A DNA stretch of 64,000 bases from Octopus bimaculoides (GCF_001194135.2 NC_069003.1:1237624-1301623), one strand, 5' to 3'. Counted from the stretch's first letter, positions 62,339-62,419 are shown. Numbers and translations: made by a program. Notes: a model not told the origin generated them from the letters alone.

Positions 62339-62419
62339 GCTAGCAAAAGTAGAACACTGGACCGTGGTTTCGTCCTGTATTTGGGACTAATCATCATTGC
62401 GACTACCTACTTTCCTAGC
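62339..62419 (-). ncRNA. Type I hammerhead ribozyme fold with variant core (A3-U8); activity unknown
   Basis: Minus strand reads GCUAG G AAA GUAG GUAGUC GCAAUG AUGAUUA GUCC CAAAUACA GGAC GAAA C CACG GUC CAGUGU U CUAC UUU U G CUAGC. Helix II is GUCC/GGAC (62387-62384/62375-62372); GAAAC 62371-62367; GUC 62362-62360; proximal helix I GCAAUG/CAGUGU with one A-G mismatch; distal helix I about 13 bp. Confidence 0.75.

What the first reader, a model, noticed from the sequence alone, without database searches (positions are those of the whole stretch)
62339..62419. Type I hammerhead ribozyme with a non-canonical A3-U8 core pair
Seen: the minus strand folds into a full type I hammerhead. Distal helix I is GCUAG-G-AAA-GUAG paired with CUAC-UUU-U-(G)-CUAGC, then a 6x1 internal loop, proximal helix I GCAAUG/CAGUGU, core AUGAUUA, helix II GUCC-CAAAUACA-GGAC, GAAA, short helix III C-CACG-G and a GUC triplet (predicted cut between 62360 and 62359). 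Established: hammerhead cores are CUGANGA...GAAA, C3 and G8 form a Watson-Crick pair that tolerates compensatory swaps to a degree, and type I hammerheads with short palindromic helix III occur in metazoan retrozymes and schistosome SINE-like repeats. Inference: both C3 and G8 are changed here, to A and U, which keeps the pair complementary. CCACGG is one transition from palindromic CCGCGG, which would allow dimeric cleavage. From memory the layout closely resembles schistosome hammerheads (CACUG CUGANGA GUCC..GGAC GAAAC..GUC CAGUG). This may be a cephalopod retrozyme or ribozyme-SINE family with a rare core variant. The alternative is a dead copy whose two substitutions are complementary by chance, or an AUGAUGA+UUA slippage.
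Basis: partly seen in the sequence, partly recalled or inferred. Interest (0 to 1): 0.85.

Follow-up and report, generated by a model that had tools for sequence, protein, structure and literature searches.

The report
Solitary hammerhead ribozyme copy, altered core
The minus strand at 62339-62419 carries a real descendant of the animal type I hammerhead self-cleaving RNA in which two normally invariant, paired core bases have both changed (C3-G8 to A3-U8). This copy stands alone and also has a helix defect, so it is more likely a weakened relic than a working ribozyme, and only other copies from the same genome can settle that.

Summary
The minus strand 62419..62339 has type I hammerhead topology. 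Helix II plus GAAAC matches the metazoan (Schistosoma/coral-type) ribozyme exactly, apart from a 2-nt loop insertion. The cleavage triplet GUC is intact, with the cut predicted between 62360 and 62359. A long, strand-specific helix I closes the motif.

Chance is excluded. A relaxed descriptor hits only this site in the window and none of 300 shuffles, and Rfam Hammerhead_1 gives 22.2 bits (E 0.008 locally), which is still below the gathering score of 34.

Only C3 and G8 deviate among the invariant core positions, and they became the complementary A3 and U8.

Several features argue that this copy is impaired:
- An A.G mismatch in proximal helix I abolishes the hammerhead fold in thermodynamic models.
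- Loop 2 is enlarged and loop 3 is not palindromic.
- There is no tandem repeat, no second hammerhead and no Penelope-like ORF remnant nearby.

I could not reach the host genome with any available collection, so whether A3-U8 is private decay or a family-wide covariation is untested. Natural U3-A8 covariation is already known, and published mutagenesis disagrees on other pairs.

Verdict: a new, probably impaired member of a known kind. The active A3-U8 family remains a live rival at about 0.25.

The parts
62423..62430 (-). Outermost extension of helix I, 5' arm (ACUGAUCU)
   Evidence: Pairs with 62338-62331 (GGGUCAGU) in the MFE folds of the 161-nt and 107-nt minus-strand segments. The helix has 8 bp, 3 of them G.U.
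62407..62419 (-). Distal helix I, 5' arm (GCUAGGAAAGUAG)
   Evidence: Forms 13 bp with 62352-62339. It appears in every MFE and centroid fold. The flank duplex is -25.1 kcal/mol, in the top 0.9% of window background.
62401..62406 (-). Internal loop 1, 5' side (GUAGUC), opposite the single U at 62353
   Evidence: Read from the sequence. An internal loop beyond a 6-bp helix I is the position of the loop 1 tertiary-contact element in metazoan type I hammerheads (PMC4209133, PMC6155905). Whether the contact is kept was not tested.
62395..62400 (-). Proximal helix I, 5' strand (GCAAUG), with A62397 mismatched against G62357
   Evidence: Forms 5 of 6 pairs with 62359-62354. Changing A62397 to C in silico raises P(helix I) from about 0 to about 0.8 and P(helix II) from 0.27 to 0.93.
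62388..62394 (-). 5' half of the catalytic core, AUGAUUA in place of CUGAUGA (A3 = 62394, U8 = 62389)
   Evidence: The Rfam alignment places it on model positions CUGAcGA. Against the canonical 26-mer there are 2 substitutions and one 2-nt insertion.
62372..62387 (-). Helix II (GUCC/GGAC) with loop 2 CAAAUACA
   Evidence: Identical to the metazoan consensus GUCCCAAAUAGGAC except for 2 extra loop bases.
62369..62371 (-). Core G12 A13 A14
   Evidence: Read from the sequence and from the Rfam alignment.
62361..62368 (-). Helix III: A15.1-U16.1 and C15.2-G16.2 closing the tetraloop CACG
   Evidence: The architecture matches the coral-metagenome copies (GAAAC agcu GUC), which have a palindromic loop.
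62359..62360 (-). Predicted scissile bond: C17 (62360), cut, C1.1 (62359)
   Evidence: This is the position after the GUC triplet in the aligned motif. Cleavage itself is inferred, not shown.
62354..62359 (-). Proximal helix I, 3' strand (CAGUGU)
62339..62352 (-). Distal helix I, 3' arm (CUACUUUUGCUAGC, with G62344 bulged)
62331..62338 (-). Outermost extension of helix I, 3' arm (GGGUCAGU)
62273..62288 (.). Tentative target-site duplication, copy 1 (CTTAAAACTTCTTATA)
   Evidence: Matches 62965-62980 at 15 of 16 positions. The support is weak, because 5 of 53 window segments of the same size hold a comparable repeat.
62965..62980 (.). Tentative target-site duplication, copy 2 (CTTAAATCTTCTTATA), lying inside a short 10-nt tandem repeat
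   Evidence: If it is real, the insertion spans about 62289-62964 and the hammerhead lies about 50 nt from its 3' end.

Best explanation
This is a single, dispersed copy of a hammerhead-bearing mobile element of the kind common in invertebrate genomes: non-autonomous retroelements that depend on Penelope-like elements, or hammerhead-carrying SINE-like repeats.

In the parent element the type I hammerhead, on the strand that is the minus strand here, cuts the transcript after GUC. The products carry 5'-OH and 2',3'-cyclic phosphate ends, which a tRNA ligase can join into a small circular RNA for reverse transcription.

This copy keeps almost the whole motif, but it is most likely a catalytically weak or dead relic:
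- The C3-G8 core pair is replaced by A3-U8.
- Proximal helix I has an A.G mismatch three pairs from the cleavage site, which shifts the predicted fold to an alternative rod.
- Loop 2 has two extra bases.
- Loop 3 has lost its palindrome.
- No partner copy is available for dimeric cleavage.

Shown: the motif, its homology to metazoan hammerheads, its strand-specific structure, its solitary state, and the folding defect in silico. Inferred: the mobile-element origin, the cleavage chemistry and the loss of activity.
For: Homology and non-randomness:
- Rfam Hammerhead_1 gives a full-length alignment at 22.2 bits.
- The descriptor hit is unique, with 0 hits in 300 shuffles.
- The architecture matches genuine hammerhead copies in coral-associated metagenome contigs: cacagug CUGACGA GUCCCAAAUAGGAC GAAAC agcu GUC cacuguu.

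RNA-level structure on the hammerhead strand only: z = -3.34 for the minus strand against -1.51 for the plus strand. G.U pairs in the long helix I account for the asymmetry.

Impairment of this copy:
- The hammerhead secondary structure is -14.8 kcal/mol against an MFE of -23.1 kcal/mol.
- P(proximal helix I) is about 0 and P(helix II) is 0.27 in the ensemble.
- Repairing A62397 to C restores these to about 0.8 and 0.93, with either 3/8 pair.
- A complete double-mutant scan of a type III hammerhead found that only the C3G/G8C swap rescues activity. [quoted passage not shown]

Solitary state: there is no other copy of the motif or its flanks in 64 kb and no tandem array.

Literature context:
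- Most metazoan type I hammerheads have a 6-bp helix I, a 4-bp helix II and a 1-2 bp helix III with a small palindromic loop, and they sit in repeats (PMC4209133, PMC7229834).
- Single dispersed motifs are commonly truncated element copies (PMC4209133).
Against: - Of the 13 invariant core positions only 3 and 8 differ, and they changed to complementary bases. Given two random core hits, I estimate roughly 1/78 x 1/3, about 0.4%, for any Watson-Crick outcome, and less for two transversions (my arithmetic).
- The 27 bp of helix I, helix II, helix III and the cleavage triplet carry only one disrupting change. The copy therefore does not look heavily decayed, which makes two independent private hits in the core unlikely. 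This favours inheritance of A3-U8 from a source element.
- From memory (Przybilski and Hammann 2007, RNA 13:1625, not held in the library), any Watson-Crick pair at 3/8 retained cleavage competence in two type III hammerheads.
- Nearest-neighbour folding ignores tertiary contacts and possible stable G.A pairs.
Confidence: 0.55

Rival explanations
1. A3-U8 is an inherited, family-wide natural covariation of the C3-G8 core pair in an active hammerhead lineage of this genome. This copy, or at least its source element, self-cleaves. The A-U pair keeps Watson-Crick geometry, so the 2'-OH of residue 8 can still act as general acid.
For: - Only positions 3 and 8 of the invariant core have changed, and they are complementary.
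- The rest of the motif and a 27-bp, strand-specific helix I are well preserved. Two private random hits are therefore improbable.
- Natural covariation at the same pair, U3-A8, is documented in about 1300 Schistosoma Cercyon-type motifs (PMC4209133) and in several hammerheads from other sources (PMC3088659).
- With helix I repaired, the A3-U8 sequence folds into hammerhead helices as well as the C3-G8 revertant does.
- Among 36 metagenome-derived canonical copies, the 8 defective cores each have single defects and none has a compensated pair. Compensated doubles are thus not a common decay product, though the sample is small.
Against: - No second copy could be examined.
- The motif scores below the Rfam gathering score.
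- The comprehensive double-mutant data show no rescue by A-U at these positions in one hammerhead (PMC9901934).
- I found no report of natural A3-U8, although the library is incomplete.
- This copy has a helix I mismatch that removes the fold in silico.
- Penelope-like elements can proliferate without canonical hammerheads (PMC8557442), so a shared variant would not by itself prove activity.
Confidence: 0.27
2. This is a domesticated, single-copy hammerhead kept by the host, for example inside an intron or UTR. It would be analogous to the conserved intronic type I hammerheads of amniotes (RECK, CTCL, DTNB).
For: The motif is solitary and has an unusually long closing helix I with strand-specific structure. 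Domesticated type I hammerheads derived from retroelements are known (PMC6155905).
Against: - No gene, exon or conserved element is recognisable around it.
- The core deviates from consensus and helix I is mismatched, which is the opposite of the strict conservation seen in exapted hammerheads.
- No orthologous sequence could be retrieved.
Confidence: 0.05
3. The resemblance is chance in AT-rich sequence and has no hammerhead ancestry.
For: The Rfam score is below gathering. Scaled linearly to the whole window and all families, the E-value is near 1 (my arithmetic). Low-scoring Rfam noise is abundant in this window.
Against: - The descriptor gives 0 hits in 300 shuffles.
- The 21-mer GUCCCAAAUACAGGACGAAAC is not expected by chance, with 0 of 100 shuffles matching within 3 mismatches.
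- Independent support comes from the flanking helix I and from sequence identity with the metazoan consensus.
Confidence: 0.02

Closest known systems
Schistosoma Sm-alpha / Rfam Hammerhead_1 (RF00163) type I hammerhead
   Same: It has type I topology, a 6-bp proximal helix I followed by an internal loop (GUAC in Schistosoma from memory, GUAG here) and a distal stem. Helix II is GUCC/GGAC with loop CAAAUA. GAAAC, a short helix III and a GUC cleavage site are all present (PMC6155905).
   Different: The core has A3-U8 instead of C3-G8. Loop 2 has 2 extra bases. Helix I has an A.G mismatch. The distal helix I is much longer (13 + 8 bp). The Rfam score is 22.2, below 34. No SINE-like or tRNA-like head was detected.
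Invertebrate non-LTR retrozymes (coral, mussel; Cervera and de la Pena 2020, PMC7229834)
   Same: The hammerhead architecture is the same, including a 2-bp helix III capped by a tetraloop. The GC content is low. The coral-associated metagenome copies retrieved here read cacagug CUGACGA GUCCCAAAUAGGAC GAAAC agcu GUC cacuguu.
   Different: Retrozymes are tandem repeats of a 150-450 bp unit, whereas this is one copy with no internal or neighbouring repeat. Its loop 3 is not palindromic and its core is non-canonical.
U3-A8 covariant hammerheads (Schistosoma Cercyon Penelope-like elements, PMC4209133; several other examples, PMC3088659)
   Same: Both partners of the 3-8 core pair are replaced so that Watson-Crick complementarity is kept.
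   Different: Those keep a pyrimidine at 3 and a purine at 8 and arise by two transitions. Here there is a purine at 3 and a pyrimidine at 8, by two transversions. Those occur in many copies, while here only one copy is known. The Cercyon motifs are minimal hammerheads without helix III.
Minimal hammerheads in pLTRs of Penelope-like elements
   Same: They occur in association with retroelements, often as single dispersed motifs from truncated copies, and lie near the element's 3' end (PMC4209133, PMC8557442).
   Different: Minimal hammerheads of Penelope-like elements have a longer helix II and little or no helix III. No RT or GIY-YIG remnant lies near this copy.

Membership tests
Hammerhead ribozyme, type I (Rfam RF00163) | Three helices around a core, with helix I open-ended and helices II and III closed by loops | tested here: met
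   The explicit structure was written and evaluated. The descriptor scan recovers it uniquely, and Rfam aligns it end to end over model positions 1-45.
Hammerhead ribozyme, type I (Rfam RF00163) | Invariant core C3 U4 G5 A6 N7 G8 A9, G12 A13 A14, A15.1-U16.1, H17 | tested here: not met
   Eleven of 13 fixed positions are present. C3 is A (62394) and G8 is U (62389). The two changes are mutually complementary.
Hammerhead ribozyme, type I (Rfam RF00163) | Score at or above the curated gathering threshold (34 bits) | tested here: not met
   The score is 22.2 bits, and there is no hit at gathering thresholds.
Hammerhead ribozyme, type I (Rfam RF00163) | Loop 1 / loop 2 tertiary contact that supports activity at physiological Mg2+ | tested here: inconclusive
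   An internal loop (GUAGUC/U) sits beyond the 6-bp helix I, and loop 2 keeps CAAAU-A but has 2 extra bases. No tool here models tertiary contacts.
Hammerhead ribozyme, type I (Rfam RF00163) | Site-specific self-cleavage after H17 | not testable with these tools
   This needs in vitro transcription and cleavage, or mapping of RNA ends. Secondary-structure modelling predicts that the hammerhead helices are poorly populated in this copy.
Metazoan non-LTR retrozyme | Tandem repeats (dimers to multimers) of a 150-450 bp unit, each with a type I hammerhead | tested here: not met
   No tandem repeat of that period surrounds the motif. No second copy of the motif or its flanks exists in the window. 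Only 1.6 kb of sequence is available on the 5' side before the window ends.
Metazoan non-LTR retrozyme | Expression as linear and circular RNAs of unit length | not testable with these tools
   No transcriptome data were available.
Penelope-like element (pLTR hammerhead) | Adjacent ORF with reverse transcriptase and GIY-YIG endonuclease, or a recognisable remnant | tested here: not met
   Pfam found nothing in the three minus-strand frames across about 61100-64000 at E up to 1. A six-frame motif scan of the whole window found no RT or GIY-YIG signatures.
Hammerhead-bearing SINE-like repeat (Sm-alpha type) | Pol III-type tRNA-like head with A and B boxes upstream of the hammerhead | tested here: inconclusive
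   An A-box-like string TAGCTCAG..GGTA lies at 62457-62442 on the minus strand. However, Rfam finds no tRNA-like match at E up to 10, ARAGORN finds none, and there is no clear B box.

The most novel reading that the evidence does not exclude
The A3-U8 pair is not decay. It would be a family-wide, catalytically competent covariation of the hammerhead core pair in a mobile element of this (probably molluscan) genome. To my knowledge, and within the incomplete library searched, that would be the first natural hammerhead lineage with a purine at position 3 and a pyrimidine at position 8. It would show that nature has explored more of the 3-8 pair's sequence space than the known C-G and U-A states. 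It would also mean that descriptor searches fixed on CUGANGA systematically miss such families.
Probability: 0.25. Interest if true: 0.55.

Novelty: new member of a known kind. Interest (0 to 1): 0.35.

Why it matters
If this is a relic, it is one more dispersed hammerhead copy from a mobile element, useful mainly for repeat annotation.

If other copies share A3-U8 and cleave, it would extend the known natural variation of one of the most conserved contacts in a model ribozyme. It would bear on the conflict between mutagenesis studies about which 3-8 pairs are tolerated. It would also argue for relaxing the core in genome-wide hammerhead searches.

Either way the mechanism stays within what is known. 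Compensatory change at 3-8 has been seen in nature (U3-A8) and in vitro, so the surprise for a specialist is moderate.

Tried and rejected
Searches for other copies all failed:
- The exact 21-mer GTCCCAAATACAGGACGAAAC gave no hit in metagenome contigs or viral contigs, and its 20-nt core TCCCAAATACAGGACGAAAC gave none in prokaryotic genome contigs.
- The relaxed pattern GTCCCAAATN{1,5}GGACGAAAC in metagenomes returned 88 loci. Only the canonical hammerheads from coral-associated and a few other contigs were real. The rest were bacterial chance matches, and none was related to this copy's flanks.
- Exact look-up of the ORFs overlapping or next to the motif, and of two transposon-like ORFs of the window, found nothing on record.
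- A six-frame chimeric protein probe across the motif found no homologue.
- The DUF7083 ORF of the window found no homologue. The host genome therefore seems absent from the protein and contig collections.
- Full-text search for the sequence strings found nothing relevant.
- Searching for hammerhead plus octopus or cephalopod found only the Penelope-like element paper, which does not describe cephalopod hammerheads.

Other dead ends:
- The whole-window Rfam scan at permissive E-values was swamped by microsatellite-driven microRNA noise and was uninformative.
- No Penelope-like ORF was found in the coral loci to use as a query.
- Przybilski and Hammann 2007 (PMC1986816) is not held.
- The supplements of PMC9901934 hold no per-mutant data.

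Rejected readings:
- The alternative register (A)UGAUGA followed by a UUA insertion keeps G8 but leaves helix I with only two wobble pairs.
- A 3-bp helix III with a 2-nt loop is sterically impossible (second parse).
- Tandem or dimeric retrozyme organisation is not present.
- Pure chance is excluded.

Full report
What is there. On the minus strand, 62419..62339 reads GCUAGGAAAGUAG-GUAGUC-GCAAUG-AUGAUUA-GUCC-CAAAUACA-GGAC-GAA-AC-CACG-GU-C-CAGUGU-U-CUACUUUUGCUAGC. These are a 13-bp distal helix I with one bulged G, a 6x1 internal loop, a proximal helix I, a seven-base 5' core, a 4-bp helix II with an 8-nt loop, GAAA, a 2-bp helix III with loop CACG, and a GUC triplet. C17 is 62360, so the predicted cut falls between 62360 and 62359.

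Proximal helix I has an A.G mismatch (A62397/G62357). Helix I also continues outward for another 8 bp (62430-62423 with 62338-62331), which gives about 27 bp of pairing around the motif.

Is it more than chance? Yes.
- At curated thresholds Rfam reports only a tRNA-like element elsewhere in the window.
- At permissive thresholds Hammerhead_1 (RF00163) aligns over its whole length at 22.2 bits. E is 0.008 for 601 nt, both strands, all 4227 families. The gathering score is 34.
- A deliberately relaxed descriptor that allows any Watson-Crick pair at positions 3/8 finds only this site in 64 kb. It finds nothing in 300 dinucleotide-preserving shuffles.
- The 21-mer spanning helix II and GAAAC is unique in the window even with 3 mismatches allowed, and is not expected by chance.
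- The flanks that make up distal helix I form a -25.1 kcal/mol duplex. This evidence is independent of the covariance model. Only 0.9% of same-geometry positions in this microsatellite-rich window reach that energy.
- The structure is strand-specific. The 107-nt minus strand has z = -3.34 (0 of 200 shuffles as stable), and the plus strand has z = -1.51. G.U pairs in the helix would produce that asymmetry.

What is it related to? The Rfam alignment shows that this is the metazoan type I hammerhead. So do the genuine hammerhead copies I retrieved from coral-associated and other metagenome contigs, which read cacagug CUGACGA GUCCCAAAUAGGAC GAAAC agcu GUC cacuguu. The shared features are a 6-bp helix I, helix II GUCC/GGAC with loop CAAAUA, and a 2-bp helix III capped by a tetraloop. 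The literature describes this layout as typical of animal hammerheads embedded in repeats (PMC4209133; PMC7229834; PMC6155905). Against the canonical 26-mer CUGAUGAGUCCCAAAUAGGACGAAAC, the window copy has two substitutions (C3 to A, G8 to U) and a 2-nt insertion in loop 2.

Context. The window is AT-rich, microsatellite-rich eukaryotic DNA with assembly gaps, SINE-like repeats and transposon fragments, and no clear host gene.
- The hammerhead is solitary. There is no other copy of the motif or of 61.9-63.0 kb anywhere in the window.
- No tandem repeat of retrozyme period is present.
- Pfam gives no match in the minus-strand frames around the motif, and no RT or GIY-YIG motif occurs anywhere in the window.
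- No tRNA-like head is detected.
- A 16-nt direct repeat (15 of 16 identical) at 62273-62288 and 62965-62980 could be a target-site duplication. It would bound a roughly 676-bp insertion with the hammerhead about 50 nt from its 3' end.
- Comparable repeats occur in 5 of 53 control segments, so this is only a lead.

The core variant. C3 and G8 form a Watson-Crick pair in the active structure. Natural covariation to U3-A8 is documented (PMC3088659; about 1300 motifs in Schistosoma Cercyon-type elements, PMC4209133). I found no report of natural A3-U8, but the library is incomplete.

The biochemical evidence is split.
- A complete double-mutant scan of a type III hammerhead found strong rescue only for the C3G/G8C swap. 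[quoted passage not shown]
- From memory, Przybilski and Hammann (RNA 2007) reported that any Watson-Crick pair at 3/8 retains cleavage competence in two type III hammerheads, with context-dependent preference for pyrimidine-3/purine-8. That paper is not held here, so I cannot quote rates.

Private decay or inherited variant? These are my own estimates.
- Given two random hits among the 13 fixed core positions, the chance that they fall on 3 and 8 and give any Watson-Crick pair is about 1/78 x 1/3, or about 0.4%. It is lower for two transversions.
- The about 33 base pairs of helices I, II and III (66 paired nucleotides) contain only one disrupting change, so the copy does not look heavily decayed. 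That makes two private core hits less likely still.
- Among 36 metagenome-derived canonical copies with a readable 5' core, 28 are canonical. The other 8 each carry a single defect, and none has a compensated 3/8 double change.
- These points favour inheritance of A3-U8 from a source element.
- Against that, large surveys have not reported A3-U8 families, so the prior is low.
- Inheritance would not prove activity either, because Penelope-like elements can proliferate without canonical hammerheads (PMC8557442).
- If the ancestral helix I strand was CACUG, a common metazoan form, then three C:G to A:T transversions lie within 12 nt (CACUG-CUGAUGA to CAAUG-AUGAUUA). That pattern would suggest a clustered mutational event rather than selection. 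This is inference.

Is this copy likely to work? Probably poorly.
- The hammerhead secondary structure is -14.8 kcal/mol against an MFE of -23.1 kcal/mol for an alternative rod. The rod pairs UAGUCG with UGAUUA, which uses the new U8, and pairs GGAC with GUCC.
- In the ensemble, proximal helix I has probability of about 0 and helix II 0.27.
- Changing only A62397 to C restores these to about 0.8 and 0.93, whether the core is A3-U8 or C3-G8. The helix I mismatch, not the 3/8 pair, is therefore the main predicted folding defect of this copy.
- Loop 2 is enlarged.
- The helix III region ACCACGGU is no longer self-complementary: two copies would pair with two central A.C mismatches. No second copy is nearby for dimeric cleavage in any case.
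- Nearest-neighbour models ignore tertiary contacts, so this is suggestive rather than decisive.

Attempts to obtain other copies. Exact and relaxed DNA pattern scans of the metagenome, viral and prokaryotic genome collections gave nothing from this family. Exact look-ups of window ORFs also gave nothing. Two protein searches failed as well, one with a six-frame probe across the motif and one with a transposon ORF.

Verdict.
- It fails strict membership tests for RF00163 on two counts: two invariant core bases differ, and the score is below gathering.
- It also lacks the defining contexts of a retrozyme, a Penelope-like pLTR or a tRNA-headed SINE. I therefore file it as a hammerhead-derived, solitary mobile-element copy.
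- My best estimate is that this copy is catalytically weak or dead (0.55).
- The alternative, that it represents an active A3-U8 covariant lineage, remains open (about 0.25-0.3). A genome-wide copy survey and a simple cleavage assay would decide it.

Noticed in passing
window 5155-5226 (+): A tRNA-like sequence passes the Rfam tRNA gathering score (44.4 bits), but ARAGORN does not call it. It sits among repeated segments (5248-5398 and 5472-5639 match 3122-3303, 53277-53444 and 55428-55609 as inverted repeats), so it is probably the head of a tRNA-derived SINE rather than a tRNA gene.
   Followed up: partly
window 9451-9631, 20624-20827, 26971-27151, 39638-39982, about 60636-60806: This is a dispersed repeat family of about 150-180 bp, with at least five copies in both orientations at 83-92% identity. 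It gives recurring pseudo-translations such as GELAETLARW..FRLP..FKFRRGRLCLSSFR, and looks like a SINE-like element.
   Followed up: no
window 4605-4895 (+) and 43291-43530 (+): There are two transposon protein fragments. One ORF matches Pfam DUF7083 (E 4.8e-13). The other is a zf-RVT domain (E 4.8e-07) at the C-terminal end of a reverse transcriptase, interrupted by an assembly gap. The DUF7083 ORF had no homologue in the large protein collection.
   Followed up: partly
window 1156-1761 (+): A tandem array of a 23-nt unit, with about 18 or more copies at 60-91% identity to the reference, lies next to a run of N. It yields long repetitive pseudo-ORFs on both strands.
   Followed up: no
window 62442-62457 (-): TAGCTCAGCGTGGGTA lies about 25 nt upstream of the hammerhead's outer helix. 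It resembles a tRNA D-arm / pol III A box (TAGCTCAG..GGTA). No B box and no tRNA-like covariance-model hit accompany it.
   Followed up: partly
window 62273-62288 and 62965-62980: These 16-nt direct repeats (15 of 16 identical) flank the hammerhead region at 692-nt spacing and are a possible target-site duplication. The upstream copy lies in a short (TAAATCTTCT)n repeat. Control segments show such repeats in about 9% of cases.
   Followed up: yes
loci L002-L087 (contigs Ga0126343_*, ERZ1740055.*): Coral-associated and other metagenome contigs hold many copies of a canonical type I hammerhead (CTGACGA GTCCCAAATAGGAC GAAAC AGCT GTC). Some occur as inverted pairs about 230-450 bp apart on one contig (L041, L047). 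Of 36 copies, 8 have single core defects.
   Followed up: partly
whole window: Permissive Rfam scanning returns 450 sub-threshold hits. Almost all are microRNA families (mir-297, mir-466, mir-3149 and others) landing on (TA)n/(CA)n microsatellites. This is a low-complexity artefact, not genes.
   Followed up: no
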